The translations under genes and the position numbers were made by a program. The notes beneath the pieces are model-generated. The model ran no database searches. It saw nothing but the letters and a program-made list of their open reading frames with translations, and was not told the DNA's origin. Positions 9,601 through 56,307 of a DNA stretch of 64,000 bases are shown here, one piece after another. This DNA comes from Ophelia neglecta (taxonomy: Eukaryota), in NCBI GenBank assembly GCA_965285935.1, contig OZ260665.1, forward strand, positions 17,422,001 to 17,486,000. Reading direction: 5' to 3'. Every line of letters starts with the position of its first letter. Within the stretch, counting starts at the first letter, position 1.

Positions 9601-11893
9601 AACTTCTCATATTATTATTACACACGGCAGTATCGGTATTGTAGACGGGGACTTCTACAGGGAGTTAATGAATGAACATTTTATTGTCTAGTTAATACCA
9701 TTTTAGAAGAATATATTTTAATTTATTAAGGGGAAAATACGACTCTTTGATATGCATACAAGTGAACCTTCTTAACAATAATAATTTCTAAACGCCTTTT
9801 TAGGTAATGAATTTTTTCACAATCACATAGATTTTAAGCGTACTTTCTTCGTTTAGGGGTACAAGGTCCAACAGGGCCACCGGGCCCTCCAGGGCCCATT
9901 GGACCGGGAGGCGGCCCCGTGGGGCCCATTGGTCCCCCTGGCCGAACAGGAGCAACAGGGCCCAGTGGTAGTCCAGGTCGGCCGGGATCCACAGGTTATC
10001 AGGGTAACCCAGGAGCCGAAGGCCGTCCAGGCAGAACCGGAGCAACAGGCCCGTGGGGTGTAATGGGGCACACAGGTCGCACAGGCAGTACGGGAGCCTC
10101 AGGTTACGACGGCAGGACGGGTGGTACCGGAATCACCGGACCCGAAGGCCCGACTGGTCGAACGGGAGCCACAGGTGACCGAGGCTGGATGGGTAGTACG
10201 GGAGCCACCGGACCCGAAGGCAGGATAGGTCGAACGGGAGCCACCGGATCCACAGGCAGGATAGGTTAAACGAGATCCACCGGACAAGCGATTAAAGGTG
10301 AACGCGGCTCAGAGCGGGTCCTTTTCTTAAAAACCATCAGTGTCGTTCTCACAGCTTAATAAATATATGTAAATACCGCAGAGGTTCTCGGACAATAGCT
10401 TCATGATGATAGTTCAAATGCTATTCAAATCACCCAATGAAGTTAAATATTTGAGACAATTTTTAAACTAATCTCGATCAAAATTGAAACATATTAAAAG
10501 GAAACTAATTTTTAGATGCATTCAAATTGTTTAAGTATGAATAAATATTAAGGATACAAATACAATATAAAATAACCAAGATTCTGTTTGTGCAGAAAGT
10601 GAAAGTTATAGATAAATTTAGATCTGGATATGTTACTATTAGCAAATAAAATGCTTTTGCCTATATTGAAACCTAATGTTTTTATATCGACTTTAACAGC
10701 AAATTAACGTTTAAATCTATATATTTAGTTTTAAATGACGCTATTCGCATAATAAGCATGTAGACTCTTCAGATAGTTTGCTATGAACATTCCGATTAGA
10801 AGTAAAGGGCATTTATCACGGTCAGTGTTTAAACGGAGACAGAGAAATGTACTCGCTTGGCTCCAATTGTGTAACTCCTTATTAACAAGATAAGACACAA
10901 ACCACTTGTTACGGCAGCCTAGGCCGAGTAGTGACAAAGTTGGTACGGCATGTGGCGCCCCCAGTTAATCGCCAGCCGAAATGTGTCGCTAAGTGTATCT
11001 TAGTCACGTGACAGTCATGGAAGGAAGCTGCCAGCAGCGTAATTTGGGTTGTTCCTCTCTGACCGGGCATCTGTCGAATAATATGTAAGTTCTGATAATA
11101 ATAATAACAACAGTACTTTCTTGTAAATTTATCATGGTGTATGTTTGTGCAGTTTATTTACGCTGTCGTTTCGTAATTTCAGCAAACCTACTGATATTGC
11201 TGGTGAAGGCTAACCGTCGTTCGTGTTGAGAAGAAAATAAAGTGTCGTCAATAGAGTGTATTTACTGGTACCAGACTTGTCATTTATCCGTGTCGTAAGA
11301 GTTTGGACGTCACACAACTGTTATATTGCTAGTAGTACACAAAATATAAACACATACCCAGCTACCATTTTCCGCTGGTCTTGTGTGATAAGACAGTACA
11401 AAGATTGGTTATTTAGAGACTTATTACATAAACGTCTACATATCCAGGAAGTGACGTAGCACTGCGGCTAACAGTGGTGATGCTATAATAATGTAGATTT
11501 AAGTTCATAGACAACAGACATGTTTTTTTCGTCTCAATGGCGTCAACTGCAGACCTATAGGTTAGCAAATTGTCTGGTGGAGTAATATATTCCACGACTG
11601 AGATATACGGACCTGGCTGGTGGTTGCCAGTAGGTTCGGAAATGGTATTTTTCTATGGATAAACTTCTAATTAATTTAAATAATTGTTTTCTGCCTCCTA
11701 TATAACTGACGTCTTGGCTGAATTTACTTCGTGTAGTCATCCGATGAAAATAGATCAAAATTTGCGTTGTCCATATTTAAATGCACGCTGCTAGAACATG
11801 TCTGCCTGCTGTGTCACGTGGTCAGGTGACGGGTGGCCCAGGTGAGTGATTGAAGGAGTGAATAGCTACTTTGTGTTAAATGTCAACGGGGCG
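6617..11893 (+). repeat. Segmental duplication unit A (collagen-like locus)
   Basis: 6617-6790 recurs at 11894-12066; 8778-11893 aligns with 16050-19010; its 3' part also aligns with 47790-49995. Confidence 0.8.
9857..10269 (+). pseudogene. Collagen-like gene copy A: intact Gly-X-Y exon, signal-peptide exon missing
   Basis: TTTAG acceptor at 9855-9856, then [34 protein letters not shown]...GRIG*. The region that holds exon 1 in copies B and C is replaced by unrelated sequence at ~8110-8777. Confidence 0.7.
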
Positions 11894-14800
11894 GTATCAA
11901 AAAACAGCTACCGAGAGTGACAAGAAAAGAATACAATGTGACAAACATAATGTAAAGTTTCAGAAACGATTACCCATAGAATTGGTTAAGTGGTAAAAAA
12001 AAAAAAAAATGTAGGTGGGTCGAAACGAGGGCTGTGTCGCCTTAAGCATTTTAAGCGCTTGTTCTAAAGGTTTTTTTTTTATTCCTGAAGGGCGTCTGTA
12101 AAACCTCTGCGGCAGGTGCAGTAGGTAGCACCTCCATTCTCCATGTAGTCATGTATCTTCTGTAAAAGCAATGTGAACCGGGTTGGTGTTGGAGCTGACA
12201 GTTTTAAATGTATTATAAAAAGGGGACCGTACACACGGTAGACAATGAAAATCATTCATTATGAATAATCCATTACTTCGGCCCGAATTCATCCAGAACT
12301 GTCAGCTGCAGGCCCTCAAATATCAATCCCCAGGGCCAGGTTTCTACAAGCTGTATTAAGGTTAGGGATTAGATGCGTTTATTACTGATTAGCTGAGACC
12401 ACGTTAATCTGTGTCTCAATTAACCAGGATCAAGTCTTAGACCAAAAAAGTTAACTTTAGACCAAATGCAGCTAAATTAAGATTAAGACGAATTGAGCGC
12501 TTTAATCCAGATGTAAATCTGAGTGAAGAGGTAATACTGCTACTAAAAACCGGGAACACTTAATTCCCTGAAATCACATTAAAAGTCTAGTGATTGGGCC
12601 TTAAAGAATAATAAATGTTACCCAGTGTAATGAAATCCTATAAAATATTAATGTGAATCACTCACAGGCCTATTTGCACTGCGGAATCTTCAGCATGTCT
12701 CAATGTCCAAATGGATAATATTCAGCGTGCCACATTCGAATAAGATATAACTAGTGTCTACTTTTGAAAGGAGGTTGAATAGACACAAAATAATTAAATA
12801 TCTACGCTAGTACTCCGTTCTTTTCATTTCGTATTGATTAGATGATGGCAAATCTTTGGATTGTGAACCAGTGACTGTTGTGGCAAAGAAGCTGTGCCAG
12901 ATAAACTCCGAAAATTTCTTCGGTAATAGCTTCAGACTTCTAGGAAAATAATGGCCCTATGCACCCCCCCCCCCCACACACACACACTACCCAGACCGAA
13001 ACCCTGTGAGATACATGTAAAACTACCATTTGTCTTGGACAAGTAAACCTATTAGCCCGTTGGGATATAGTCGACCACCCCTTCTCAGAATTTACGGGAT
13101 ATACGTTTTCGGAAACCTTATTATTTTTGGATTCAGAATCCATTTTTTGCCGAATATATAAATTTGCTCCTGGGCACCACGGCCTGTGAAGTAGTGGAAT
13201 CCTATCGTGTTGTGTAGTAATTAAGTGCCGACGATCCTAACCTCAGCAAAAAACGTACAGAAATGAGGTACTTATAAGTCAATGGTTCATAAATTTGACT
13301 GAAAATGATGCCTAGTCTTAGAATACAAGGATTTTGTTTAAGGCAGGTGGCAAATGTATTTATGACGGATTCTGTTTACATAAAACAAATATATCGTTTA
13401 CAGAACGGAAAAGATACTGCTTTTATAGGCAGTGTAAGTGGGGTTTGTTTCTAGTAACATTTCCAAAAAAAGATTTGGTGCACCTGATAATCTACGTGCA
13501 CTTTTCCATAATGCAAAACGCAGCCACACATGTGAAGATTCCATTAAGAGGAGGGTATGTTTGTTAGTCGACGGCCTTTTTAACGATATAACGTCGCCAG
13601 ACCTAAATGGGAACGCATGTACAATGCATGAGCTAGCATCCTGATGTGCCAGAAAGCACTGCTACGTATATCTAACTACTTTTTGTTTTCTCCTTTCTCC
13701 CTAAAACATTTCTATTTAACTTTTTCTGGCCCAATATTGGTGTCACGGGTTGCTTACATGAACTCTGTATCGCTGTTATTTCATGATATATCTCTGCCAC
13801 ATTGTTCATTTCGGCATTAAAATACACTTGCCTGCGTGAGTGGGTGTAAAATCAGGCATTAACCCATTACTATTCAATTCTTCCAGTAAATTAATTCTTA
13901 TCGAACATGATTTGGTTTTTTCTTTCATCTCAAGACTCTAGATTACTTCCGATAATCACTCTTAGCAACCATTTAATAACTGAATGATACCAACGAAGCC
14001 TGAAAATACATCTTAAATTTATATTTCTATAACCCCCAAAGTGCTCTCTAAATACACATAGATGATAAAAATGCAGAGTTCATTGATTGATTACATTCAG
14101 ATTAACATACGTGGGGCCGCGGATTAGAGTTACGTTTTGGATGCTGTAGTACACAGGAGATGTAATTTAATTAGACAAACGAGTGGATTCTTAAGCCATT
14201 CTTAAGAGATTAATCATGAGGTGAACAAGAAACATGTCATATTAAACTTTTAATGCAGAGGCCTAGTTATGATTATTTAACACAGCTACAGTACCACTAC
14301 ACGTTATCATTTAAAACTACTATAAAAATGAAGGGAATGTGAGAAATAGAAATCGATTTTTTGTCAGACTTTTGTAAATTGTTTTAATATTTCAAGCAGA
14401 CTGATAAACAATGAACATCTTTGAACGTATGTTTAAAGTTAGTGCCCTTTTGCACTCTTAATTCCACGTGTCGTATTTAATTGTAAGGTATATTGCAAAC
14501 AGGTTCTACATGTAAGTGACACTGAATCTCGTTGTTTGCTATCATCCGTGCTTCATTTAAATTCACAATTAAATGTGTGTTTTATTTTGCATACTTAACA
14601 TGCTAAATAAATATTGGTTATTTCTTAATAAATATTGATCATTTTTATCTTACTTATATTCAAATTCCCAAAACAGGTGTAAGATATAGCAAAGAGCATG
14701 CGACTTAAAAGGTGTCCTATTACATGTCATGTTATGATTAGCCATAGTGGGACCTTCAAATAATCTTGTAAGCTATTTTCATATGGGACGTTTAAATAAC

Positions 14801-15206
14801 TTTACATATTTGGGTGGTTTAATTTATCTAACATCTCAGGTATGAACGAGGTGATCATTATACCGTATACATAACTCTTCCAAACATACGCTATTGAAAT
14901 TTAACATTGTGATAAACCAGCGCAACTTATTGCACAGTGTCTTTGATGAGTTTTCTTTTCCCCATTTTATAATAAAACTATTGTAGTAAAAACCGTTTGT
15001 ACGCTTACAGCTGACTGCACCCGTACTATTCGTGGGCATTGATTGCTTTTTTTGGTCCGTGTGTGGCGAATACTGAGAATGCATTTCTTGTCGCCTAGCT
15101 TTTCTTCCGGGTACCTTTGTGTTAATAACAGCAGTCATAGGCCTGTAAATGCTAGGTTATCATATATGGTTTTAACTTTCAACAGTGAAGGAACGCAACA
15201 CTTGAC

Positions 15207-17359
15207 ATGATTGTTTATTTCTTATTTTCTCTGTGGGTGATCTGCGGTGGGCAGGAAACATCCAACGAGAGTTTCTACCCGGTCATTCAACTGAAACCAG
15301 AAATAGAAGACAAAGACATGTGTACCTTTTTGATTCGAAATTCTTTCCTTAAACAGTGTATCAAAGACACTGGTCTTGACGATGATAGGAAGCTTATTGC
15401 TGAATTGAAATGGGACATTGCTGCTCTGAAGGTCCAAAATGTTGCCATCATGTCTGCTTTAAAAGAACTGCAAAACAATGGTGAGTAACATTTGATGACT
15501 TGACCCCCAAAAAGGTGATGCATACTGTCGCATTTTAAATTTGCGAAATGATGTAGGAATTAAGTATACGAACTTTAACCACAAAACTGGAATGCCCTCT
15601 CATGTTTCTTAAGCCCTAACTAAAGTAGTAGACACTGACAGATAGCGATATGCAAGGAATCCAGTAGCGACACAATTCGAACTTGAGTCTAATTGTCAAG
15701 GTCAAATAGGCAAAGATGAATTCTTCCCAGTCGCGTTACGATTAAATGTGGAAAGATAGGTGTATAAAATGTATTTGCCATTAGTAGGAATTCATATCCA
15801 GTGAGTCTTAATTTTTATCTTCATTTTGAACTTGACCTCATTTTATGAGTGGACCGATGTAACAGAAATCCCCATTGCCATCTCATGGCTTATCGAAGCC
15901 AGCTATACGCACCAAATGTATTGACCAACAAAAGGAAGGCATGTAAGAAAAGACCAGGGTGATTTTGAAGGTGGACTCCTTATGTATTAATATGTAACAA
16001 GTCAAATTGCCATAACTGGAATCCTCTCGGTCTCCCACAGGCTTAGCAACGCACGATAAGTGTGTTCACAATGAAATTATTTAATCTAATGTAGAGGTTA
16101 TTTGAGGAAATTGAAGTCTTATTTGTGTTCGTATGTATTGTTTTACGGTGCAAAAGTATACCGAAACTTTTTTTTCTGAGTTATAGTGGCAAAATGTAAC
16201 GGTATGCATGTGAAGTGAAGCTAATCACTAGTGACTTGTATATACGTAGTGTATTTGTGTCCTGCAATCAAATCGTATCTCATTTTAAGCTAAACATCTG
16301 CATAAAAGCATTCGCCCCTTCAGTTGAAAGGTTTGCATAACAAAAAAGGGCTCGCCTGTTCAACGTGCACTGCACACTTATTCACAATAAACTACCTAGA
16401 TATGACATACATGTGTCCCCGTGCCTAACCAACCATGTTCTCTACGTTTATTTACAGTAAATGTTATAGTACAATAAATGCTAGTGCAAAAACAATGTTG
16501 TACGCCTGGCAAGTGCTGTAGTTTTTATGTTAGAGATGCTATTGCTAGCCCCCTAGCCATTTAATGTACCATTTGGCGAACAGCCGGTAACAACGAACAC
16601 AGTAGTATATGTAGAAAAGAGTACCTTCACGATAATAACATTTACAAATGAAATATCATTAATAACTTCCCATAATATTATTACACACGGCAGTATCGGT
16701 ATTGTAGACGGGGACTTCTACAGGGAGTTAATGAATGAACATTTTATTGTCTAGTTAATACCATTTTAGAAGAATATATTTTAATTTATTAAGGGGAAAA
16801 TACGACTCTTTGATATGCATACAAGTGAACTTTCTTAACAATAATAATTTCTAAACGCCTTTTTAGGTAATGATTTATTTCACAATCACATAGATTTTAA
16901 GCGTACTTTCTTCGTTTAGGGGTACAAGGTCCAACAGGGCCACCGGGCCCTCCAGGGCCCATTGGACCGGGAGGCGGTCCCGTGGGGCCCATTGGTCCCC
17001 CTGGCCGAACAGGAGCAACAGGGGCCTATGGTAGTTCAGGTTCGGCGGGATCCCCAGGACCGAGAGGCGACCTTGGTTACCCAGGAGCCACAGGCCGTCC
17101 AGGCAGAACCGGAGACTCAGGAGCAACAGGCCCGTGGGGTGGAATGGGGTCCACAGGTCGCACAGGCAGAAGTGGTCGAACGGGAGCCACAGGTGACCGA
17201 GGCTGGATGGGTAGTACGGGAGCCACCGGATCCAGAGGCGGGAATGGTCGAACGGGAGCCACCGGATCCAGAGGCGCGTCTGGTCGAACGGGAGCCACCG
17301 GATCCTCAGGCAGAGATGGTCGAACGGGATCCACCGGATCCACAGGCAGGATAGGTTAA
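15207..17359 (+). CDS. Secreted short collagen-like protein, copy B; exons 15207-15480 and 16920-17359, 237 aa
   Basis: Signal peptide MIVYFLFSLWVICGG, C-x11-C (CTFLIRNSFLKQC) and heptad coiled coil (LIAELKWDIAALKVQNVAIMSALKEL). A phase-1 GTGAGT...TTTAG intron joins in frame to Gly-X-Y repeats rich in GRT/GAT/GST. Confidence 0.85.
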
Positions 17360-19555
17360 ACGAGATCCACCGGACAAAGGGGCTTCCAAGCGATTAAAGG
17401 TGAACGCGGCTCAGAGAGGGTCCTTTTCTTAAAAACCATCAGTGTCGTTCTCACATCTTAATGAATATACGTAAATACCGGAGAGGTTCTCGGACAAAAG
17501 TTTCATGATGGTAGTTCAAATGCTATTCATGTCACCCAGTGAAGTTAAGTACTCGAGGCAATTTTAAAACTAATCTAGATCAAAATTGAAACATATTAAA
17601 AGGAAACCAATTTATCATGCATTCAAATTGTTTTAGTATGAATAAATATTAAGGATACAAATACAATATAAAATAACAAAGATTCTGTTTTTTCAGAAAG
17701 TTAAATCTATAGATAAATTTAGATCTGGATATGTTACTATTAGCAAATAAAATGCTTTTGCCTACATTGGAATTTATGTTTTTATATCGACATTAACAGC
17801 TAATTAACGGTTTTATATCTATATATATTTAATTTTAAATGACTCTATTCGCTTTATATACATGTAGACTCTTCAGATAGTTTGTTATAAATATTCCGAT
17901 TAGAAATAAAGGGCATTTATCACGGTCCGTGTTTAAACGGAGACGGAGAAATGTACTCGCTTGGCTCCGGTTGTGTAACTACTTACAAGACACAAATCAC
18001 TTGTTACGGCGTTACGGCAGCCTAGGCCAATTAGTGACGAAGTTGGTCCGGCATGTGGCGCCCCCAGTTTATCGCCAGCCGCAATGTGTCAGTACTAAGT
18101 GTATCTAAGCAAACAAGTCACGTGACAGTCATGGAAGGAAGCTGCCAGCAGCGTTATTTTGTTTGTTCCCCTTTGACCGGGCATCTGTCGAATAATAATG
18201 TAAGTTCTGATAATAATAATAACAGTCCTTTCTTGTAAATTTATCATGGTGTATGTTCGTGCAGTTTATTTACGCTGTCTTTTCGTAATTTCAGCAAACC
18301 TACTGATATTTCTGATGAAGGCTAACCGTCGTTCGTGTCGAGAAGAAAATAAAATGTCGTCAATAGTGTGTATATACTGGTACCAGACTTGTCATTTATC
18401 CGTGTCGCAAGAGTTTGGACGTCACACCATTGTTATATTGCTAGTAACGTTAGTACACAAAAAAATAAACACATACCCAGCTACCATTTTCCGCTGGTCT
18501 TGTGTGATAAGACAGTGCAAAGATTGGTTATCTAGAGACTTATTACATAAACGCTTACATATCCAGGAAGTGACGTAGCACTGCGGCTAACAGTGGTGAT
18601 GCTATAATAATGTAGATTTAAGTTCATAGACAACAGACATGTTTTTTCGTCTCAATGGCGTCAACCGCAGACCTTGGCAAATTGTCTGGTGGCGTATTAT
18701 CCTCCACGACAGGGATATATGGACCTGGCTGTTGGTTGCCAGTAGGTTCGGAAGAGGTATTTTTCTATGAATAAACTTCTAATAAATTCAAATAATTGTT
18801 ATCTGCCTCAGCTGTGTCATAACTGACGTCTTGGCTGAATTTACTTTGTGTAATCATCCGATGAAAATAGATCAAAATTTGCGTTGTCCATATTTAAATG
18901 CACGCTGCTAGAACATGTCTGCCTACTGTGTCACGTGGTCAGTTGACGTGTGGCCCAGGTGAGTGATTGGACGAATGAATAGCTACTTTGGGTTGATTAT
19001 CAATGGGGCGGGGCTTACCCATGATGTTCACCGTTTGCACACAAGGAGTTTGGATATTTACAGCTGTTAAGTCAGTTAAAATTTGATTGAACCAGATAAG
19101 TCTTCTTCCTCGAACACTAAATAGTGTATTACGTGTACTTGATTGGCTTGAAGTATAATGAAACAGTTCTTTAATAGAATTCATAATGTTTTGACACTGA
19201 GGGCGGTGCCAAGGCCATGATGTAGGCCTAGTAACAGCCTAGCAACAGATACTCGTTACTGAGCCCGTGGAGGGGAGGGGGGCTGTCAGGCTTGCTAAGT
19301 CTCGCTACTACGTAGGTCCCCTGATAGCAACCCCCCCCCCCCCCACCCTTCCTCCTCCTCCTCCTCGTCAACCGGCGGACTGACAAGTACCTATCACTAC
19401 AAGATGTGAAGTGGGGAATGAGGAGTGGAGAAAAAGTGACACATGTCCCGATTAACAAGTTTACAAACTAGTATTTTGAAAGTTTTTTTTTTACTTTTAT
19501 TACTTTATTCTATGCATGAGATGATAGGGCTATAAGAGGCTGTCTTTTACAAGTA

Positions 19556-19732
19556 CAGTGAAACCTGCCTTACAGACCACCTCTCTAATCAGACCACCTG
19601 TCAAACCAGACCACTGATGTAAGGATCTTTTTGTATACTTTCAATGTTGAATAACCTGTCTAAACAGACCACCTTAGAAATAAGACCCGTATTTCCAGTC
19701 CCTTTGGTGGCCTTAATTCACAGGTTTCACTG
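19556..19732. mobile_element. pogo-like MITE copy
   Basis: Same TIRs and TA flanks; the matching copy in unit C is at 50497-50673. Confidence 0.85.
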
Positions 19733-19953
19733 TACGGGGAAAAGATTTTGGCCATTGCTGCAGCCCCCAGTATACACTTCGTATGTATGATAGACTACAT
19801 TTAACACATATAGCCTCCTCCAACCATAGACTCCCATAGAATTAAGGCGAGACAAACAAAACTTGTAGTGCATACAATGTAAAGAATGAATTGATTTTAA
19901 ACAGCCATGTGGTGGGTATTTGATATTTAGATTTGACACAAAGGACTAAAGTA

Positions 19954-20134
19954 CAGTGAAACCTGCCTTAAAGACCACCTCTGTATTAAGACCACCTGTC
20001 AATTCAGACCACTAATATGAAGGCCATAGTATACATTTTCAATATAAATAACCTCAGTCTGTAAATAGACCACCTGTATAATCAGACCTGCATTTCCCAG
20101 TCCCTTGGATGGTCTTAATTCACAGGTTTCACTG
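19954..20134. mobile_element. pogo-like MITE copy, inserted after the B/C duplication
   Basis: TIRs plus TA TSD; the empty site ggactaaagTAttggtacag is present in unit C at ~50911-50930. Confidence 0.9.
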
Positions 20135-20271
20135 TAGTGGTACAGAATCCATTACACAAGAATTCCTTTGGACAAACGATCCGTGCATGTGAGAGATGGA
20201 CGAAAGGAATGACAAACGTAAGTCGGACGTCACAAGCTAGCGAAGCGACAAAAAAACAGGACATTTTGCAT

Positions 20272-20660: not shown

Positions 20661-20706
<46 letters not shown>

Positions 20707-20708
<2 letters not shown>

Positions 20709-23166
20709 AGTATGTTTTAAGACTTAGGCAGACCCGAAGTATATAATAACCAGCATTAGGCAGACCTCAAATTTAGGCAGACAAAATCGGGTCTGCCTAA
20801 GTTTTCAGTTGCCATGGAGGCCTTGCTCTTTTGATTTTAATTCTTTTAGCAGTACTCCATGATAGGGTGGAAGGTACTCCCTTCGCTAAAAATCTAAGAC
20901 ACACCCAGTTTAAGGTATTAAAGCTATATCCCACTCTTAAAATCAAGGTCAATATATTTGGAACTATATATATTTTCATCCTTAGGTGGACATCTTTCAG
21001 CAGTGAATAAAAATGTAAAAATGGATGTATATTTATTTTTCAATAATTGGACATTTTACGCAAACCATCTATCTACAATTTCACAATATATTTAGATGAA
21101 AATGAACGTAAATGAAAAAAATGATATTTTGGTCGACCGTTTGGCCGTTGCTGCGATTTGGCCTGAGCCCAACCGGAAGTAGTTACCAAGACGCAGGGAC
21201 AGGGGACATTGAGGTTTTTCTCTAAAACAGCCCCATCTAGTTATGTTGTAAAGTAAAATAATTAATAAAGTAAAGAATTAAAATTCTTCTAGCAAAGTTA
21301 TATGAGCTTGCGATATATTGTTGGTCAGAGGAAGATGAATGTCTGCATAATGACGGATGTGTGTATGTCATGTCTACCTAATGATCGATATATATATATA
21401 TATAGTGTGATTATATATGGGGGTGCCTTATGTTGGTTATTTATTTTTTTTATATATACAAGGTCTGCCTAAGGAGTGCAGCATATATACAGAAAATTAG
21501 GCAGACCTCCAGATTTGTATATCCTAATTTAAACAATAAAATTTGAAAATTCTAAAATTCCCAATAGATCTATAGCAGTAACATTCTTAATTATCTTTTA
21601 AAATAGAAGTAAAGAATTAAAATTCTTCTGGCAAAGGTATATGAGCTTGCGATATATTGTTTGCCAGAAAAGGATGAATGTCTGCATAATGATGGATGTG
21701 TGTATGTCATGTATACCTAATAATGGATATATATATAGTGTGATTATATATGGGGGTGCCTTATGATGGTTATTTATTTTTATATATACAAGGTCTGCCT
21801 AAGGAGTGCAGCATATATAGAGAAAATTAGGCAGACCTCCAGATTTGTATATCCTAATTTAAACAATAAAATTTGAAAATTCTAAAATTCCCAATAGATC
21901 TATAGCAGTAACATTCTTAATTATCTTGTAAAATAGAAGTAAAGAATTAAAATTCTTCTAGCAAAGGTATATGAGCTTGCGATATATTGTTGGCCAGAAA
22001 AGGATGAATGTCTGCATAATGATGGATGTGTGTATGTCATGTCTACCTAATGATGGATATATATATATAGTGTGATTATATATGGGGGTGCCTTATGATG
22101 GTTATTTATTTTTATATATACAAGGTCTGCCTAAGGAGTGCAGCATATATACAGAAAATTAGGCAGACCTCCAGATTTGTATATCCTAATTTAAACAATA
22201 AAATTTGAAAATTCTAAAATTCCCAATAGATCTATAGCAGTAACTTTCTTAATTATCTTGTAAAATAGAAGTAAAGAATTAAAATTCTTCTGACAAAGGT
22301 ACATGTATATGAGCTTGCGATATATTGTTGGCCAGAAAAGGATGAATGTCTGCATAATGATGGATGTGTGTATGTCATGTCTACCTAATGATGGATATAT
22401 ATATATAGTGTGATTATATATGGGGGTGCCTTATGATGGTTATTTATTTTTATATATACAAGGTCTGCCTAAGGAGTGCAGCATATATACAGAAAATTAG
22501 GCAGACCTCCAGATTTGTATATCCTAATTTAAACAATAAAATTTGAAAATTCTAAAATTCCCAATAGATCTATAGCAGTAACTTTCTTAATTATCTTGTA
22601 AAATAGAAGTAAAGAATTAAAATTCTTCTGGCAAAGGTATATGAGCTTGCGATATATTGTTGGCCAGAAAAGGATGAATGTCTGCATAATGATGGATGTG
22701 TGTATGTCATGCCTACCTAATGATGGATATATATAGTGTGATTATATATGGCAGTGCCTTATGATGGTTATTTATATATACATGGTCTGCCTAAGGAGTG
22801 CAGCATATATACAGATAATTAGGCAGACCTCCAGATTTGTATATCCTAATTTAAACAATAAAATTTGAAAATCTCTACATTCCCAATATAGCAGTAATAT
22901 TCTTAATTATCTTTTAAAATAAAATAATTATTTGTCTATATATATATACAAGGTCTGCCTAAGGAGTGCAGCATATATTCAGAAAATTAGGCAGACCTCA
23001 AGATGGGTATATCCTAATTTAAACAATATAATTTGAAAATTCTAACATTCCCAATATAGCAGTAACATTCTTAATTATCTTGTAAAACAAAATAATTGAA
23101 AAAGTAAAAAAATGAAATGTCTGCCTAATACTGGTTTTGGGGGCAAGTCTGCCTAAGGATGAAAAC

Positions 23167-23168: not shown

Positions 23169-23205
<37 letters not shown>

Positions 23206-44009: not shown

Positions 44010-44012
44010 AAA

Positions 44013-45071
44013 TGTTGCGTGACTGGTGGGTCAGCAAAAGTTCAAACAGGTATTTTAAATTCAACCAGTTTTATTTTAACAGCAATAACTATGGTCATAG
44101 TTGGGGGTTTCTTATGGCTGGCAGAGGCAAGGCAAGGTGCAATACTTAAATTTTCAAGTCTAGAAAATTTCAAGTCCCGAACTTCAAAGTTAATAAAAAT
44201 TTCTAATATCTTACTAAAAGTCCAATGTAGCTGTGATTTCTAAATAAGCTCGAATTTATATGGATGTCTATAAGCTCCTGGTGGACAGTTCAATCACAGT
44301 TCTTGGCAGAATTCGAATTTTCGATTTTGGTTGAAAGTCAACCTTGAATTTTCGAATGAGGTATAAACTCGAATTTTCGAATGCAGGTATAAACTCGAAT
44401 TTTCGGGAGCAATGCTTACAGCCAGGACTTGAATTTTCGAGTTCTGACAGCTGAGTAACACATTTCTGTCAAGTTACCAAAAAGAACCAACAGAGCGAAA
44501 GAATGAACGTAATAAACGTTAACAGTTCAATTTGAATGTAAGAAACTGAAATATTCAGTATACTCAGCCTAGGCTGTATATTTGAAGCCAATTTGGCTTT
44601 TAAAATGGCATGTTTACCAAGTGAAGCGTAGGAGACAAACTTGAAAATTCGAGTTACGCGCCCCCTTTTATAGTTTTCTGGCCAGCAGACGGTGCTGACA
44701 TCCTAGCAACGCCACTATGATGTAGGTCGCAGGTCACATAAATTACGTCACACAAGGCCCACGAGATTTGGCACAATACACCAGTATCGCGGTAAAATGT
44801 ACCTATTCATGTCGTATCTACTAAATTACGAGTGATAAATAAGTTCTTTGTCACCGGGAACCATTGCTTGCTTAATGCCAAGAAATACACTAAAAGTTAC
44901 GGTACCATCATGCAATGTTTAGTCAAGTGGGTCAAAATGGCGGTGGCACATCCGGTCTTCTGTCAACGATACAATTTGGAGCTACAAAGTTTGTTACAGC
45001 AATAAAAGTCTCAAGTGTTTTCGCTCAGGTAACAACAGTTTATTAAAGGTCATAAAACACGGTACACCACA
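44013..45071 (-). repeat. Gypsy 5' LTR with candidate TATA box
   Basis: Direct repeat of 26341-27399; TATAAAA on the minus strand at 44672-44666. Confidence 0.95.
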
Positions 45072-45937: not shown

Positions 45938-48426
<2,489 letters not shown>

Positions 48427-50496
48427 ACGAGATCCACCGGACAAAGGGGCTTCCATGGTGAACGCGGCTCAGAGCGGGTCCTTGTCTTAAATACCATCAG
48501 TGTCGGTCTCACAGCTTAATGAATATACATATGCATACCGCAGAAGTTCTCGGACAATCACCCAGAGAAGTTAAATATTTGAGACAATTTCAAAACTTAT
48601 CTTGATCAACATTGAAACATATTAAAAGGAAACCAATTTAACATGCATTTAAATTGTTAAAGTATGAATAAATATTAAGGATACAAATATATTATAAAAT
48701 AACCAAGAGTCCGTTTTTGCAGGAAGTTAAATTTATAGATAAATTTAGATCTGGATATGTTACCATTAGCAAATAAAATTCTTTTGACTTCATTGGAACC
48801 TAATGTTTTACATCGACATTAACAGCAAATTAACGGTTTTATATCTATACACTACTTTCAAATGACTCTATTCGCATAATAAGCATGTAGACTCTTCAGA
48901 TAGTTTGCTATGAATATTCCAATTAGAAGAAAAGGTCATTTATCACGGTCCGTGTCGCAGAAATGTATTCGCTTGGCTCCGATTGTGTAAACCTTACAGG
49001 ATAAGGCACAAACCACTTGTTACGGCAGCCTAGGCCAAGTAGTGACAAAGTTGGTCCGGCATGTGGCGCCCCCTGTTTATCGCCAGCCGCAGTGCATGTC
49101 GCTAAGAGTATCTAGGCCTACAAGTCGCGTGACAGTCATGGAAGGAAACTGCCAGCCAGCGTAATTTGGATTGTTTCTCTTTGACCGGGCATCTGTCGAA
49201 TAATATGTAAGTTCTGATAATAATAATAACAGTACTTTCTTGTAAATTTATCATGGTGTATGTTCGTGCAGTTTATTTACGCTGTCGTTTCGTAATTTCA
49301 GCAAACCTACTGATATTTCTGATGAAGGCTAACCGTCGTTCATGTTGAGAAGAAAATAAAGTGTCGTCAATAGTGTGTATATACTGGTACCAGACTTGTC
49401 TTTCATCCGTGTCGCACCACTGTTATATTGCTAGTAGTACACAAAAATTAAACACCCAGCTACCATTTTCCGCTGGTCTTGTGTTATAAGAGAGTGCAAA
49501 GATTGGTTATCTAGAGACTTATTACATAAACGTGTACATATCCAGGAAGTGACGTAGCACTGCGGCTAACAGTGGTGATGCTATAATAATGTAGATTTAA
49601 GTTCATAGACAACAGACATGTTTTTTCGTCTCAATGGCGTCAACTGCAGACCTTAGCAAACTGTCTGGTGGGGTATTATTATATCCTCCACGACAGGGAT
49701 ATACGGACCTGGCTGTTGGTTGCCAGTAGGTTCGGAAGAGGTATTTTTCTATGAATAAACTTCTAATAAATTTAAATAATTGTTTTCTGCCTACACCTGT
49801 GTCATAACTGACGTCTTGGCTGAATTTATTTTGTGTAATCATACGATGAAAATAGATACAAATTTGCGTTGTTCATATTGAAATGCACGCTGCTAGAACA
49901 TGACTGCCTATTGTGTCACGTGGTCAGGTGACGCGAGACCCAGGTGAGTGATTGGACGAATGAATAGCTACTTTGTGTTGATTGTCAATGGGGCGGGGCT
50001 TACCCATGAAGTTCACCGTTTGCATACAAGGAGTTTGGATATTTTCAGCTTTTAAGTCTGTTAAGATTTGACTGAACCAAATAAGTCTTATTCCTCGAAC
50101 ACTAAATAGTGAATTACTTGATTGGCTTTAAGTAGAATGAAGCAGTTATTTAATAGAATTCACATTGTTTTGACACTGAGGGCGATGCCAGGGCCATGAT
50201 GTAGGCCTAGCAACAGCCTAGCAACGTACTCGTAACTGAGTCCGTGGAGGGGGGGGGGGGGGCTGTCAGGCTTGCTAAGTCTCGCTACTACGTAGGTCCC
50301 CTGACAGCAAACCCCCCCCCCCCTCCTCCTCCTCGTCAACTACAAGATGTGAAGTGGGGAATGAGGAGTGGAGAAAAAGTGACACATGTCCCGATTAACA
50401 AGTTACAAACTAGTATTTTGAAAGTTTTTTTAAACTTTTATTACTTTATTCTATGCATGAGATGATAGGGCTATAAGAGGCTGTCTTATACAAGTA

Positions 50497-50673
50497 CAGT
50501 GAAACCTGCCTTACAGACCACTCCTATAATCAGACCACCTGTCAAACCAGACCACTGATGTAAGGATCATTTTGTATACTTTCAATGTTGAATAACCTGT
50601 CTTAACAGACCACCTTAGAAATAAGACCCGTATTTCCAGTCCCTTTGGTGGCCTTAATTCAAAGGTTTCACTG
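50497..50673. mobile_element. pogo-like MITE copy
   Basis: TIRs and TA flanks; duplicate of 19556-19732. Confidence 0.85.
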
Positions 50674-52419
50674 TACGGGGAAAAGATTTTGGCCATTGCT
50701 GCAGCCCCCGGTATACACTTCGTATATATGATGGACTATACGTTTAGCCTTCACCAACCATAGACCCATAATAGGCGAGAAAAACAAATCTTGTCGTCTT
50801 GTCATACAATGTAAAGAATGAATTGGTATTATTTCCTGCTAAAATTTGGCATATCTTTCTGTGTAAACTTAGCCATGTGGTGGCTATTCGATATTTAGAT
50901 TGGACACAAAGGACTAAAGTATTGGTACAGATTCCACTCCACAAGAATTGCTATGGACAACCGCTCCGTGTGAGAGATGGACGAAAGGAACAACAATCGG
51001 AAGTCGAACGTCACTAGCTAGCGATGCGAAAAAAAACGGGACATTTCGCATCGATGTCTATATCCACCGCGTGGCCAGCGGCCATCACTCATATTATGAG
51101 TAATGACCACCGCCAATACTAGGAATGAAAAGCAGATAGCTCACAGGACGGCCAGAGAGCACAACTACTGTAAGGCTATAAATAATAGGGGCTATATATA
51201 TGTTTTTTCATAGTAACTATAGGGCAAATAGATTATAAGGACATACCTACAAACACTATATCTTATAATAAATCATTGACCATGGCTGCCAGCCATTTAC
51301 ATATTTGCGGGCCTTGTGATTGCAATAGATAAATAAATTGAGTTTTTTCACTGACATGACTAAATTCTGGCCAGCAATGAGAGAATTCATCAATATATTA
51401 TTGGTGGGTATTGGCTAACATATCAGAGTGAAGTAAAAAGTGAATTTCATCCCCAATACCAGAGTTACACATAGTAGGCCTACACATGCGATTTTCTGTA
51501 GGGATTTGTGATTGGTAGAACAAATTGTTCTACAAAGAATGTCCTGAGTGTGTGATCGCCTTATCGCAGCTGTGTTTAGACACACACTCTTAAATGTCGT
51601 CTGAGGTTAAACCGCCGACAATTCGTCCTCTATAGATCTACTGGCTTTTATGATATTTTTATTTGTGCCGTTATTATCAATAGGCGTATGAATGTCGCCA
51701 CTTCACCCACCTCCCACGCCCCCTCTCCACCCTAATGCCCTAACAATACAGCAAAGCTCATGCAACTCGGCCGAACGGGGATGAGGGGGGTTGAAGGGAA
51801 GGAAATGGTAATTTCCATAATGCGTGGTTTATACGCAATTATTCTGTATGAAGCGTGCAATTGAGATTCTCTCATCATAAATCGTGAAACAATGGTTGGC
51901 TTCGAGTTGTGAAATGGAAGAATAAATTCCCTGGAGCTGTAAAGAAACAAATTTCTTTCGTGTAAACCGGGAAAGGACGGTTTTATTCCCGTAAATTGTG
52001 CTATATCCTCGACGCGCATCTACCCCACCCCCCTTCCCAAAAACTCTTTTGGAATGTCATGTGAACTGAAAAAGGGGATATATCCCCGTGAATTGTGATG
52101 ACGCCCGACTCCCCTCCCCGGTGAACCTCGAACAGCCGTATTATTTCTGAATACACTGACTAAGAGCTAGGGGCTTATAACCACTGCTATAGATATATAA
52201 TGTAAACTAGTGAATAAGATTTGAACGAGGAAAAAAGCTGGTCTGGTGTTGACCCGGTTATCAAAGGTTCATCCAGAGTTGGTAGATTTTAATGACACGC
52301 ATGACTGATCTCCAATAAAGGAACATAGAAGTACCTTAGGGTCAGGCGGATGGCAAGAGTGAAAGTACTGGCGGCTCTAGGGGCAAAGGAACGGGTGTGA
52401 GGAGGGTGTTAGTGTCTGG

Positions 52420-52810
52420 GGATGGGAGGGACGGGGAGAGAGTGTGTGCGTGAGGGGAGGGGGGGGGGGGGTCAGGAGGGGTGAGTGCGCGATGATGGGA
52501 GGGACGTGGAGAGTGTGTGTGTGTATGTGAGGGCGGGGGGGGGGGGGGGGGGGCGGTCAGGAGGGCGTGAGTGCGTGTGGATGGGAGGGACCGGGAGAGA
52601 ATGTGTGTGTGTGTATGTGGGGGGGGGGGGGGCTCAGGAAAGTGAGTGCGTGTGGATGGGAGGGACCGGGATATAATGTGTGTGTGTGAGGGGGGGGGGG
52701 GGGGGCTCGGGAGAGTGTGAGTGCGTGTGGATGGGAGGGACCGGGAGATAATGTCTGTGTGAGTGTGGGGGGGGGGGGGGTGTTAGGAGAGTGTGAGTGC
52801 GTGTGGATCG
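52420..52810. repeat. G-rich minisatellite (~70-80 bp unit, ~5 copies)
   Basis: gagtgcgtgtggatgggagggaccgggaga-(gt)n-poly(G) units. Confidence 0.85.
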
Positions 52811-53566
52811 GTGCTTTCTGTGGGGGAGAGTGAAGAGAATGGGGGAATGATGAAGAGCAGGGGTTAAGAGGAGGGACAGAGCAGAGGTTAAGTAAGGGTT
52901 GCATTTTTTTTTGGGGGGGGGGCGGTTTTGGGAGAAGGCGGGGGGGGGGGGGGGGGTTGTCTGGTAGACCCATTAGTCAAATCAAGAAGGGTATATGGGT
53001 TTTACACTAAAATAGGGCCCTTGCGGACCTATATATGGCGTCCAACTGCATCCGGCCAGACGCACCTCTCCTTCAAACATTCTACCCTTTAATTGAACCA
53101 TAAACTTATTAACGCAGGCATCTCGTAGGAAATATTTGTGACCAGAAAAGATGTATAATTTGACAATATCCGACACTTTTCTGCTAAAAATATCACTATC
53201 ATTATTAATACCACTAACCTGGTGTAACGTTTCAAATGTCGGGGACCATATTTTCGCTTTTCGGCCGATTTTGGCGTATACCATACAAATATTTTGGCTG
53301 CTAACATTTGCCGGAGTACATTGTAGTACAGGGATAGTTTGATAGAAGTTGGTCTTTTTCGCCTACAAGGCTTCTTGGGGTCGTGACCTGACCTCGTACA
53401 ATGTCTACACACGCTTGAACGGCCACGGTCGCGAATCGCCACTTGTCTTTATTATATCACGCAAAGAAAAACACATCGCGCTACCCAGATCATAACTTAA
53501 TACGAAGCTACCCTTGCCTGTGCTGAGAACACCTAGCGAGGAAAGTGCGGGACAGGCACAAGCATC

Positions 53567-56307
53567 ATGGCGATGGTCCTATCACAAAATATTAAAGTTG
53601 GCCTGATATATCTAGTATTAATATTAGAGCTTGTGCAAGGACAATCCACTGGAAGTAATGACTTTGTAAGGTATGATATAGGCGACAAGGACCAAGGAAT
53701 CTGTTCTTATTTTGTACGAGGTTCCGTAGCAGACGACTGCCAGGGTCTGTCCGGTCTGACAGCCGATGGGGAAACTACGGTGGCCCAGCAGGTAACAGTC
53801 TTACAACAAGACTCGGTCAGACAACAGAGAAAACTGGACCAGCAGGAACAACTTCTATCGGAGCAAAAGGACCAGATCGAGGGATTGGAGAACAAGATAA
53901 AATCATTGGAAGATAGACTGGACGCCGTGCTACAAAGTGGAGGTATGAATACACGTCTGAATGTAGTGCCTAAATGTCTTTTCCGTGCGATAATAGGTTT
54001 ATTCAGCGCACGTTGAAAATACGGATTTAATTCCGCGCAGTAAGTAGTACAGTATTCGTGGAATAAGCCTACTTAATGCTCGAAATAAACGATGCGCGAA
54101 CTTAATACTGTATTAATTTTGATAAACAGGTGTCAGCACTGTTGTCATATAAATAACACAAGAAACTTCGACAGCGGAAAAATCGCACAACACCCAGAAC
54201 AAAATCCTTCTCACGAAATGCCCCGTCTGACATTTACCTGCTTAGACCTATTTTCCCTCAGAAATCACGTAGTTTCTTTTGCCTGAATTAAAAAAGCTAG
54301 AGAAAACTTTATTCATTTGGTATATCTTAAAGCTATAATTCATATCGGGAATCGCTAGGGCGAACTTTGTAGAAATAATGACCCGAGTTATGGCAAAAAA
54401 TTGCTCTAGTTAAAGCTAAACTGTGGATTTACTTAGGGCACCAGTATGCTGTCCAAAGGCTGTTTTTTAATTGCGCACGGGCTTTAAAAATTTAGCCTTA
54501 AAAAACTACCCTAGGAGCGGAGCTTACCCGGATGCCAAGTATACTGACTGAATTTTATTTTAAAATTATTTGTAGTTAGATATACGAACATTGTCTTATT
54601 GAATAATTAATCAATTAATTACTAAAGTAACTATTAATCTCAATAACGTCTTTGTGTAGCCTTTACAAACGCAGGTAAAATAGAGTACATAGATTATAAT
54701 ATGTTTTTTGCAGAAGAAAAATGTCTTTGAGAGGTGTTGTTTTCAGTGTTTTGTCATTACACATCTAAAGATACGTCACTTCCTTGTATTCTGGAAGCCA
54801 CAAAACTATATTTACTGTTAAATACTCACAATGTTATTATTAAAAAAAATATAGGCCTAACTCCACGTTACCCCACAAAGTAAAATGCAATTTAAAAAAA
54901 AATCAAATTATATATTATTAGGTTTTATAAGTTGAACTTATACAATGATATGTTATTATTTAGTATTGTAATTCAGGTGATTTATTATTTTTAGGTACGG
55001 GTGGTCTCAGTGGCGTTGCTGTCCCTGGGCCTCCCGGTCCGATTGGTCCAGCGGGACCTCCTGGCGTACCAGGGAGTAAAGGCAGGACAGGGGCTACGGG
55101 CAGCCGTGGTACGATAGGGGCCACTGGCGGTACCGGACCCCTCGGCGGCCCTCCGGGCGTCCCCGGTGTGCCTGGACGAGATGGGTCTACAGGAGGTACC
55201 GGTCCTGGGGGTAGAACAGGGGCGACCGGTGCCAGCGGACGACCGGGGTCACTTGGCAGGCCAGGCTCTACCGGTCTGGCCGGAAAAACAGGTCCTGCCG
55301 GTGTTCCTGGCGAACCAGGACCTATCGGGCCCGGCGGGGGACCTCCAGGGCCCACAGGAGCTACTGGGGCTGCCGGTCCATCGGGCGGACCCCCAGGGGT
55401 GGCTGGAGCACAAGGAAGGGATGGCAAAACCGGAGCTACAGGGACCGCTGGACCAGTTGGTCGTACAGGGGCCACCGGTAATTTGGGCCCTGCCGGCCCG
55501 AACGGTATATCAGGCCGCACCGGGGCAACGGGATCTAGTGGCCTTCCCGGTTCCGTCGGCGAGCCTGGGGCAATCGGTGCCACTGGACCTCTAGGAGGGC
55601 CTCCTGGGGCAACTGGGGCTTCCGGGCGCCCAGGACCCTCGGGCGGTCCTCCTGGTCCTTCAGGGGCGACCGGGTCTACTGGAGTCGCTGGTGCAGACGG
55701 CGGGGTAGGTCCTGCCGGCCGAACTGGGGCCACAGGGCAACGGGGAAGAACGGGAGCGCCTGGAGTGTCTGGTGGTACAGGAGCAACGGGTTCTAAAGGC
55801 TTCGCCGGGCGGCCAGGGACTCCAGGTGCCCCCGGGCCAAGCGGCGGGCCGCCGGGACCCGCTGGAGCGACAGGGAGCACGGGGCCGGGCGGGGGCCCAC
55901 CTGGTGCTACGGGAGCTACCGGTAGCCTGGGTCGGACGGGGGCTACCGGTACCGCTGGAACCTCCGGGTCCTCGGGACCGAAAGGACCAACAGGCGCAAC
56001 GGGATCCACAGGGCCCCTGGGATTCACCGGCGCCACAGGACCTGATGGAAAGACCGGCGCTGACGGACTCCCCGGGCCAACCGGACCTGGAGGCGGGCCT
56101 CCTGGACCCATAGGCGCCACCGGCTTCACGGGACCTCTCGGCGGGCCTCCGGGGCGGACAGGAGCCACCGGCAGCAATGGAAAAACGGGAGCTACTGGAC
56201 AGCCGGGCAAGTTTGGTCGAACGGGTGCAACTGGAAATACAGGATCACGTGGTCCGTCTGGCTTTACCGGCGCTACTGGATCTCCAGGGCCATCCTCGAG
56301 ACGGTAA
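53567..56307 (+). CDS. Secreted collagen-like protein, copy D (older paralog); exons 53567-53942 and 54995-56307, 562 aa
   Basis: Signal peptide, C-x11-C ([13 protein letters not shown]) and long coiled coil ([33 protein letters not shown]); phase-1 GTATGA..TTTAG intron; ~140 Gly-X-Y triplets with nine G-GPP interruptions. Confidence 0.88.

What the first reader, a model, noticed from the sequence alone, without database searches (positions are those of the whole stretch)
9857..56307. Tandem family of secreted collagen-like proteins with an N-terminal Cys-x11-Cys plus coiled-coil head and no C-terminal domain
Seen: four same-strand loci (A-D). B, C and D have a signal peptide, a Cys pair with identical spacing despite low identity ([13 protein letters not shown] vs [13 protein letters not shown]), a heptad coiled coil, a phase-1 intron, then Gly-X-Y that runs to the stop codon. 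Known: most secreted metazoan collagens and collagenous lectins (fibrillar, type IV, C1q, ficolins, collectins) nucleate at a C-terminal domain, while N-terminal nucleation is typical of membrane collagens (XIII/XXIII/XXV) and streptococcal Scl proteins. The CxY/F..C plus coiled-coil head resembles the angiopoietin superclustering region. Inference: a lineage-specific family of soluble, N-nucleated, disulfide-clustered collagen tails for cuticle, tube, mucus or adhesive, still expanding.
Basis: partly seen in the sequence, partly recalled or inferred. Interest (0 to 1): 0.78.

Follow-up and report, generated by a model that had tools for sequence, protein, structure and literature searches.

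The report
Secreted mini-collagens with coiled-coil heads
An invertebrate genome carries a young tandem cluster of three intact genes and one truncated copy for small secreted collagen-like proteins that have a novel cysteine-pair and coiled-coil head, a bacteria-like threonine-rich triple helix and no tail domain; the design principle is known, but this family looks undescribed.

Summary
Loci B, C and D each have a first exon encoding a signal peptide, a Cys-x11-Cys motif and an unbroken heptad coiled coil. That exon ends in a phase-1 donor (G|GT) and joins in frame to Gly-X-Y exons that run to a stop codon.

- C has three exons.
- A is a 5'-truncated copy without promoter or head.
- The A-C stop codon lies inside the collagen repeat array, so it is a shared truncation of a once longer helix.

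The B and C heads differ with dN/dS 0.13 (p = 5e-4), so they are constrained coding sequence. No Pfam domain turned up in 98 downstream + strand ORFs. The head matches no Pfam family and no solved structure. HMMER found one relative among 1.84 billion proteins: a Logan contig with the same architecture.

Thr fills 37-75% of Y positions, which is typical of bacterial collagens and vent-worm cuticle collagen. Pro-rich triplets sit directly after the coiled coil.

Most likely these are soluble trimers that fold from the N terminus towards the C terminus. The fold direction, glycosylation, disulfide pattern and tissue role are all inferred. The angiopoietin likeness is analogy only. No RNA evidence was available, and the organism is unknown.

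The parts
9857..10269 (+). Locus A: lone collagen exon (137 codons, ends GRIG-TAA). It is a 5'-truncated copy without promoter or head exon.
   Evidence: GXY run and acceptor ag|GG. No head by tblastn. The counterpart of B 14707-16050 is missing and replaced by 7902-8777.
15207..15471 (+). Locus B exon 1: signal peptide, QETSNESF N-terminus with an N-E-S sequon, Cys-x11-Cys (15321-15359), four-heptad coiled coil (about 15375-15470), donor G|GTGAGT in phase 1.
   Evidence: dN/dS against C is 0.13.
16920..17359 (+). Locus B exon 2: Pro-rich start (GPPGPPGPI), one GGP-V-G break, then Thr-rich GXY repeats to GRIG-TAA.
   Evidence: Pfam Collagen E = 4e-19.
17360..17458 (+). Relic of a former longer helix after the B stop; in frame it reads TRSTGQRGFQAIKGERGSER followed by 13 non-collagen residues. 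The same relic follows the A stop (from 10270) and the C stop (from 48427).
   Evidence: TRF arrays run across the stop codons.
45938..46202 (+). Locus C exon 1: head, 94% identical in protein to B; Cys pair at 46052-46090.
47001..47165 (+). Locus C exon 2: phase 1-1 collagen exon of 55 codons with [15 protein letters not shown]; acceptor ttgcag|GA, donor G|GTAAGG. Absent from A and B.
   Evidence: Pfam Collagen E = 1.9e-7.
47888..48426 (+). Locus C exon 3: collagen exon with Thr at 75% of Y positions, ends GRIG-TAA.
53567..53945 (+). Locus D exon 1: signal peptide, Cys-x11-Cys (53702-53740), seven-heptad Gln-rich coiled coil (about 53777-53944), donor G|GTATGA in phase 1.
   Evidence: AF2 gives a helix at residues 72-125 with pLDDT up to 92.
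54995..56307 (+). Locus D exon 2: 436-residue collagen domain with nine GGP-P-G one-residue breaks. It contains four modules of about 83 residues and ends [12 protein letters not shown].
   Evidence: Pfam Collagen E = 1e-44.

Best explanation
B, C and D are functional genes of a lineage-restricted family of small secreted collagen-like proteins. A is a dead 5'-truncated duplicate.

Proposed mechanism:
1. The signal peptide is cleaved before a conserved Gln.
2. The 4-7 heptad coiled coil, which sits 3-4 residues before the first Gly-X-Y triplet, brings three chains into register.
3. The Pro-rich triplets directly behind it (GPPGPPGPI and similar) form the first turns of triple helix.
4. The helix then zips from N to C through a Pro-poor, Thr-rich body. 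That body probably needs O-glycosylated Thr, or a hydration network, rather than hydroxyproline for stability.
5. The helix ends free, with no C-terminal knot or recognition domain.
6. The Cys-x11-Cys element either staples a small hairpin or links chains or trimers.

The product would be a rod of roughly 40-50 nm (B, C) or about 125 nm (D) with flexible one-residue breaks, for an extracellular material or surface coat.

Shown: gene anatomy, reading-frame continuity, heptad pattern, composition, purifying selection on the head, and no detectable downstream domain.
Inferred: splicing, secretion, trimerisation, fold direction, glycosylation, disulfide pattern and tissue role.
For: Splice phase. 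All junctions are phase 1 and restore the GXY frame. The only outside relative (P0121, locus L001) ends its head the same way, at G|GTAAGG.

Selection. B vs C head: 9 synonymous and 5 non-synonymous codon changes, dN/dS 0.13, binomial p = 5e-4. This constraint acted after the shared stop codon arose.

Coiled coil. The heptad pattern is significant, and AF2 gives a confident long helix for D.

Pro gradient. Pro fraction is 0.30-0.37 in the first 30 helix residues of A-C and falls to 0-0.04 at the C end.

Thr content. Thr fills 37-75% of Y positions. Thr-type helices are known to work when glycosylated (PMC11923368, citing Mann 1996 and the Gly-Pro-Thr peptide work).

No C-terminal domain.
- No C1q, FReD or lectin match among 98 downstream + strand ORFs.
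- The stop-overlapping GT sites are poor donors: TAG|GTTAAA and ACG|GTAATC.
- Minus-strand ORFs begin about 1.6 kb after D.

Precedent. N-to-C folding from an N-terminal coiled coil is established for MACIT collagens and collagen XVII (PMC10538796, citing Snellman 2000 and Areida 2001). Nucleation by the N-terminal variable domain is established for Scl proteins (PMC8968730).
Against: - No transcript or protein evidence exists for any exon junction, 3' end or expression.
- A-C share a stop inside the repeat array, which could mark decay.
- A is clearly truncated.
- The low Pro content of the helix body makes stability uncertain without modifications I cannot test.
- AF2 is not confident about the Cys region (pLDDT below 50).
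- Oligomer state was not modelled.
- Exons outside the window cannot be excluded for D.
Confidence: 0.55

Rival explanations
1. The genes are longer than they look. Transcripts use the GT that overlaps the stop codon, or another donor, and splice on to a C-terminal recognition domain. These would then be ordinary defence collagens of the C1q, ficolin or collectin type with an extra N-terminal coiled coil.
For: Each stop codon overlaps a GT: ATAG|GTTAAA in A-C and GACG|GTAATC in D. No RNA data were available. D lies only 7.7 kb from the window end.
Against: No Pfam domain of any relevant kind occurs in 98 + strand stop-to-stop ORFs of at least 40 aa downstream of A-D. The candidate donors lack the usual +3 purine (A-C) or +5 G (D), unlike the four strong donors the genes do use. 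The next ORFs after D are on the opposite strand. In A-C the frame after the stop is a decayed continuation of the same helix, not an intron-like break.
Confidence: 0.12
2. The cluster is mostly decaying duplicates. A is truncated, and A-C carry a shared premature stop, so only D, or none, makes a working protein.
For: A lacks promoter and exon 1. The TAA of A-C sits within the 36-nt repeat array, with in-frame GXY after it. Transposons and satellites fill the space between B and C.
Against: The B and C heads show dN/dS 0.13 (p = 5e-4) since their duplication, which postdates the shared stop. All ORFs and splice sites of B, C and D are intact. A related head with the same layout exists in another sample.
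Confidence: 0.15
3. The Thr-rich collagen cassette was acquired from a bacterium or virus and fused to a host head exon, which would explain its prokaryote-like composition.
For: Thr at Y is 37-75% here, against 31.6-48.3% in bacteria and mostly Pro/Hyp in human collagens (PMC8968730). Thr triplets are over-represented in bacteria, archaea and viruses but not in eukaryotes (PMC11923368). The best database matches of the D helix are bacterial, up to 53% identity.
Against: Those matches are low-complexity compositional matches with no flanking homology. The exons have metazoan-style phase-1 introns that split the Gly codon. Vent-worm cuticle collagen shows that animals can evolve Thr-type helices themselves (Mann 1996, via PMC11923368). 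This reading concerns origin only and is compatible with the best explanation.
Confidence: 0.08
4. The Gly-X-Y frames are a by-product of a 9-nt or 36-nt periodic satellite and are not coding.
For: The repeats leave several frames open on both strands. TRF finds 36, 72, 81 and 117-nt periods.
Against: The GXY frame is the one restored by each phase-1 junction, in B/C, in D and on both sides of C exon 2. The exons start with non-repetitive Pro-rich sequence directly after good acceptors. D's 1.3 kb helix shows no tandem array at TRF score of at least 100, and its roughly 83-residue modules are recognisable only at protein level. The head is under purifying selection.
Confidence: 0.02

Closest known systems
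Membrane-associated collagens with interrupted triple helices (types XIII, XXIII, XXV) and collagen XVII
   Same: A coiled coil lies directly N-terminal to the collagen domain. Folding proceeds N to C, and helices are interrupted (PMC10538796, citing Snellman 2000 and Areida 2001).
   Different: Those are type II membrane proteins with a signal anchor and several COL domains. Here the hydrophobic stretch is only 12-13 residues, with a small-residue cleavage site before Gln, so a cleaved signal peptide is expected. No sequence similarity was found.
Streptococcal Scl1/Scl2 collagen-like proteins
   Same: An N-terminal helical domain nucleates a hydroxyproline-free collagen-like region, and there is no C-terminal globular domain (PMC8968730).
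   Different: Scl proteins are bacterial, cell-wall anchored, have no Cys pair and are stabilised by charge. Here the genes are eukaryotic with introns, the C-terminus is free (GRIG or SSRR) and the helix is Thr-rich.
Bacillus BclA-type and other Gram-positive collagen-like proteins
   Same: Thr dominates the Y position. In BclA the Thr is glycosylated (PMC8968730, PMC11923368).
   Different: BclA has a very stable C-terminal domain (PMC8968730). The matches to the D helix are compositional only.
Vent-worm (Riftia) cuticle collagen
   Same: An animal collagen whose triple helix is stabilised by glycosylated Thr at Y rather than by Hyp (Mann 1996, as cited in PMC11923368).
   Different: From my own recollection, those chains are very long cuticle collagens without this head.
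Sawfly silk collagens SfC A-C
   Same: Small, lineage-specific secreted animal collagens without hydroxyproline and with short termini of no known family; proposed as a new class (PMC3790195).
   Different: Their termini are Gly-rich, with no coiled coil or Cys pair. Pro sits mainly at X, and Thr enrichment is not reported.
Nematode cuticle collagens
   Same: Small collagens in large multigene families with short interruptions and Cys residues. Some have predicted N-terminal coiled coils (PMC10538796, citing McAlinden 2003).
   Different: The Col_cuticle_N domain is not matched. There are no Cys clusters after the helix blocks, and no conserved dibasic cleavage motif in the B and C heads.
Angiopoietin superclustering plus coiled-coil region
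   Same: A secreted protein with an N-terminal clustering region followed by a coiled coil (PMC4609988). That the clustering region carries cysteines rests on my own recollection.
   Different: Angiopoietins end in a fibrinogen-like domain and have no collagen. No match appeared in the PDB profile search or Pfam. From memory only, the Cys spacing in angiopoietin-1 is x12 rather than x11; this was not tested.

Membership tests
Collagen triple-helix repeat proteins (Pfam PF01391) | Long uninterrupted or near-uninterrupted Gly-X-Y repeats | tested here: met
   E = 4e-19 (B), 1.9e-7 (C exon 2) and 1e-44 (D). GXY runs of 114-156 residues.
C1q/TNF-type defence collagens | C-terminal globular C1q domain after the collagen stalk | tested here: not met
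   The ORFs stop at the end of GXY. No C1q match in 98 downstream + strand ORFs. Tested at DNA level only, with no RNA.
Ficolins, angiopoietins and other FReD proteins | C-terminal fibrinogen-related domain | tested here: not met
   No Fibrinogen_C match in the exons or in downstream ORFs.
Angiopoietin N-terminal superclustering region | Sequence or fold similarity of the Cys-containing N-terminal segment | tested here: inconclusive
   A profile of four heads against all PDB sequences gives only designed coiled coils. The region seems not to be represented among solved structures, and I did not type a sequence from memory.
Collectins | Coiled-coil neck and C-type lectin domain C-terminal to the collagen | tested here: not met
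   The coiled coil is N-terminal. No Lectin_C match.
Nematode cuticle collagens | Col_cuticle_N domain (PF01484) and Cys clusters flanking the helix blocks | tested here: not met
   No Pfam hit for the B and C heads at E <= 1, and only weak coiled-coil noise for D. No Cys in any collagen exon.
MACIT and other transmembrane collagens | N-terminal cytoplasmic tail and a transmembrane signal anchor of about 20 residues | tested here: not met
   The hydrophobic stretches are 12-13 residues, directly after Met (B, C) or after a 10-residue n-region (D), with C/V at -3 and G at -1 before Gln. This was read from the sequence; no predictor was run.
MACIT and other transmembrane collagens | Coiled coil immediately N-terminal to the collagen domain that nucleates N-to-C folding | tested here: inconclusive
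   The position and heptad pattern are met. Nucleation and fold direction cannot be tested in silico here.
Streptococcal Scl proteins | Cell-wall anchor (LPXTG) after the collagen-like region; bacterial gene | tested here: not met
   The proteins end GRIG or SSRR. The genes have spliceosomal-type introns.
Cnidarian minicollagens | Short helix flanked by poly-Pro and six-Cys domains at both ends | tested here: not met
   There are only two Cys beyond the predicted signal peptide, both N-terminal. There are no poly-Pro stretches and no C-terminal Cys domain. The family definition is from my own knowledge.

The most novel reading that the evidence does not exclude
Animals of this lineage have evolved, or acquired, a soluble collagen class that needs neither a C-terminal trimerisation domain nor hydroxyproline. 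An N-terminal disulfide-bearing coiled coil sets the register, and a Thr-glycan stabilised helix zips N to C. This would be a eukaryotic counterpart of the bacterial Scl and BclA design, used for a secreted material and evolving fast by tandem duplication and repeat turnover.
Probability: 0.25. Interest if true: 0.7.

Novelty: new variant of a known kind. Interest (0 to 1): 0.5.

Why it matters
If the gene models are right, these are animal collagens that put the folding nucleus at the N terminus of a soluble protein and replace Hyp with Thr at the stabilising position. Each feature is known on its own: the first from membrane collagens and streptococcal proteins, the second from bacteria and vent-worm cuticle. 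I found no report of the two combined in a secreted metazoan family.

The genes are small (240-560 residues), which gives a tractable system to test:
- N-to-C triple-helix folding.
- Stabilisation of the helix by Thr glycosylation in an animal.
- The design of short recombinant collagens.

The cluster also shows fast turnover within 50 kb: repeat expansion, exon gain in C, loss of the head in A, and a shared truncation.

Tried and rejected
1. Word search with the D collagen exon. It returned 4587 generic, mostly bacterial collagen-like hits and no self or orthologue hit, so it says nothing about family membership.
2. Two word searches with the innexin ORF to place the organism. Nothing scored at E <= 0.001. 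The organism stays unknown, and the collection holds no close relative of even a common invertebrate protein. Absence of head relatives is therefore weak evidence.
3. Full HMMER search with the head profile against 1.84 billion representatives. One hit only, P0121. Its contig is 2.2 kb and stops 108 bp after the called ORF (about 150 bp after the head exon's donor), so its collagen exons cannot be seen.
4. JGI metagenome scan with head patterns: no relative.
5. PDB profile search: only designed coiled coils.
6. AF2 of the B and D heads. Mean pLDDT was 52.6 and 56.2. Only the D coiled-coil helix is confident and the Cys region is not, so I ran no fold search, which would have been meaningless.
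7. Rfam scan of the window: nothing.
8. The bacterial promoter and terminator scan is irrelevant for a eukaryote.
9. Literature searches found no description of such a family.
10. Considered and rejected: satellite artefact, membrane collagen, minicollagen and cuticle collagen (see the membership tests).
11. Exons were handled separately by reference.


Full report
**Setting**

The window is invertebrate-type eukaryotic DNA. It holds an innexin exon on the minus strand at 2356-3243 (Pfam Innexin, E = 1e-42), nested LTR retrotransposons, a non-LTR reverse transcriptase fragment and satellites. It has no N. Nothing in it looked human. The organism could not be named: two word searches with the innexin ORF returned nothing.

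**What is there**

A six-frame scan finds long Gly-X-Y runs only at four + strand loci. Pfam Collagen confirms them, from E = 4e-19 to 1e-44.

B, C and D each have an upstream exon that starts with Met and a hydrophobic stretch of 12-13 residues. A small-residue site then precedes a conserved Gln...ICGG|QETS in B and C...LVQG|QSTG in D. Next comes a Cys-x11-Cys motif, [13 protein letters not shown] in B and C and [13 protein letters not shown] in D, followed by an unbroken heptad repeat.

The heptad pattern is real. Core residues fill 69-89% of a/d positions against 10-18% elsewhere, and at most 16 of 2000 shuffles reach that contrast. AF2 models residues 72-125 of the D head as one helix with pLDDT up to 92.

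The B and D heads are 28% identical, with a pairwise E of 2e-5, centred on the DKD..C....R.S....C..GL motif.

**Gene models**

Exon 1 ends one base into a Gly codon at a good donor: AATG|GTGAGT in B and C, GGAG|GTATGA in D. The collagen exons begin after pyrimidine-rich acceptors with the two bases that complete that Gly: ag|GG GTA CAA, and ag|GT ACG GGT. Every junction is therefore phase 1 and restores the Gly-X-Y frame.

C has an additional phase 1-1 exon at 47001-47165, with acceptor ttgcag|GA and donor G|GTAAGG. This exon has no counterpart in A or B, and C's intron has largely been replaced.

A is a lone collagen exon. tblastn finds no head. Alignment shows that A lacks the counterpart of B 14707-16050, which covers the promoter, exon 1 and the 5' part of the intron. 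That stretch is replaced by unrelated sequence at 7902-8777. A is best read as a 5'-truncated pseudogene.

**The C-terminal end**

A, B and C all end ...STGRIG-TAA. D ends ...[12 protein letters not shown].

In A-C the TAA sits inside the 36-nt repeat array. TRF arrays run across it, and the frame after it still reads TRSTGQRGF..GERGSER before a short non-collagen tail. The stop is therefore a nonsense change that shortened a longer helix, and it was inherited by all three copies.

The heads of B and C have since diverged by 9 synonymous and 5 non-synonymous codon changes. That gives dS 0.19, dN 0.024 and dN/dS 0.13, with binomial p = 5e-4. The shortened gene has therefore been kept under purifying selection.

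Downstream of the four loci, none of the 98 + strand stop-to-stop ORFs of at least 40 aa matches C1q, a fibrinogen-related domain or a lectin. The best hits are isolated chance-level matches. The GT sites that overlap the stops are poor donors. The next ORFs after D lie on the opposite strand.

Within the limits of DNA-only evidence, there is no C-terminal domain.

**The helix**

Thr occupies 44%, 40%, 75% and 37% of Y positions in A, B, C and D respectively. Pro occupies only 5-20% of Y positions.

This profile is the one reported for bacterial collagen-like proteins: Y = Thr in 31.6% of all bacteria and 48.3% of Gram-positives, against 33-42% Pro/Hyp in human collagens (PMC8968730). Thr-containing triplets are reported as over-represented in bacteria, archaea and viruses but not in eukaryotic collagen-like proteins. 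(Gly-Pro-Thr)10 folds only when its Thr residues are galactosylated, as in vent-worm cuticle collagen (PMC11923368).

Pro is concentrated at the very start of the helix. In A-C the Pro fraction is 0.30-0.37 over the first 30 residues and falls to 0-0.04 at the C end.

Each helix has one-residue breaks of the form GGP-V-G or GGP-P-G. D has nine of them. They alternate between blocks of 15 and 63-69 residues, and four modules of about 83 residues align with each other.

**Relatives**

- The B and C heads match no Pfam family at E <= 1. D gives only sub-threshold coiled-coil noise.
- A four-sequence head profile against all PDB sequences finds only designed coiled coils.
- HMMER against 1.84 billion representatives gives one protein, P0121, at E = 8.7e-8.
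- P0121 comes from a 2.2 kb Logan contig of run ERR14113986. It shows the same layout: a hydrophobic leader, [21 protein letters not shown], 3.5 heptads, then G|GTAAGG in phase 1. The family therefore exists in at least one other sample.
- A JGI metagenome scan found nothing.

The collection returned nothing even for an innexin, so the near-absence of relatives is weak evidence of true rarity.

**How it most likely works**

The layout is a cleavable leader, a coiled coil 3-4 residues before the first triplet, the most stable triplets next to it, a Pro-poor body and a free C-terminus. This fits N-terminal nucleation and N-to-C zipping.

That mechanism is established for MACIT collagens and collagen XVII (PMC10538796). 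Nucleation by an N-terminal domain is established for Scl proteins (PMC8968730). Coiled coils beside collagen helices are described as nearly ubiquitous in the superfamily (McAlinden 2003, cited in PMC10538796).

What differs here is the combination: a soluble protein, N-terminal nucleation, no tail domain and a Thr-type helix.

The role of the Cys pair is open. The turn-forming residues in the middle of the motif (NS, GS, EG) would fit a disulfide-stapled hairpin. AF2 instead draws a low-confidence helix for B, which would imply interchain bonds. Either reading is inference.

**Verdict**

This is a real gene family, apparently undescribed, whose design principle is known. I rate it a new variant of a known kind, with moderate interest. 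The main uncertainties are the lack of RNA evidence, the unknown taxon and the poor metazoan coverage of the searchable collections.

Noticed in passing
window 26341-45071: Nested retrotransposons separate B from C. The outer LTR pair is 26341-27399 / 44013-45071 (99.1% identical) around Gypsy-type gag, RT/RNase H and integrase ORFs on the minus strand (27987-33607). The inner LTR pair is 33946-34509 / 41371-41934 (99.5% identical) around a BEL/Pao element (Peptidase_A17, DUF1759, DUF5641). A non-LTR RT fragment lies at 41951-43405 on the + strand. The near-identical LTRs point to recent insertions.
   Followed up: partly
window 20664-25273: Satellite block with units of about 331-338 bp and sub-repeats of 168 and 244 bp, 91-98% identical, downstream of locus B.
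   Followed up: no
window 206-387, 19554-19734, 19952-20136, 46426-46606, 46605-46774, 50495-50675, 59038-59219, 61659-61825: An interspersed repeat of about 185 bp (SINE-like, 73-91% identical, both orientations). Two copies lie in C's first intron. No Rfam match.
   Followed up: no
window 2356-3243 (-): Innexin exon (Pfam E = 1e-42) with FYQWT in place of the usual YYQWV signature (the signature is from my own recollection). The word search found no relative at all, so this lineage or paralogue is poorly represented in the protein collection.
   Followed up: partly
window 57936-58664 (-) and 60325-60633 (-): Two minus-strand ORFs downstream of D. One is 242 aa with no Pfam match. The other is 102 aa with a weak TRADD-like N-terminal domain hit (E = 0.009, below the Pfam cut-off).
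   Followed up: no
window 52381-53007: G-rich and TG-rich repeats of about 75 bp just upstream of locus D, giving poly-Gly or poly-Pro ORFs on both strands. They are not in Gly-X-Y register and are not part of the collagen genes.
   Followed up: no
window 10270-10360, 17360-17461, 48427-48520: The two length differences among A, B and C after the shared stop are 12 nt and 9 nt, both multiples of three. With only two events this may simply reflect the 9-nt repeat structure, but stop-codon readthrough was not excluded.
   Followed up: partly
window 55153-56151: D's helix carries GGP-P-G one-residue breaks in a regular 15 / about 66 residue alternation (four modules of about 83 residues). The periodicity is visible in protein, but TRF does not detect it in DNA.
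   Followed up: partly
L001 1770-2042 and window 15252-15284: The best conserved stretch between the window heads and the Logan relative is the predicted mature N-terminus, QETSNESF(Y/I)PV, which holds an N-E-S glycosylation sequon. It is more conserved than the coiled coil.
   Followed up: no
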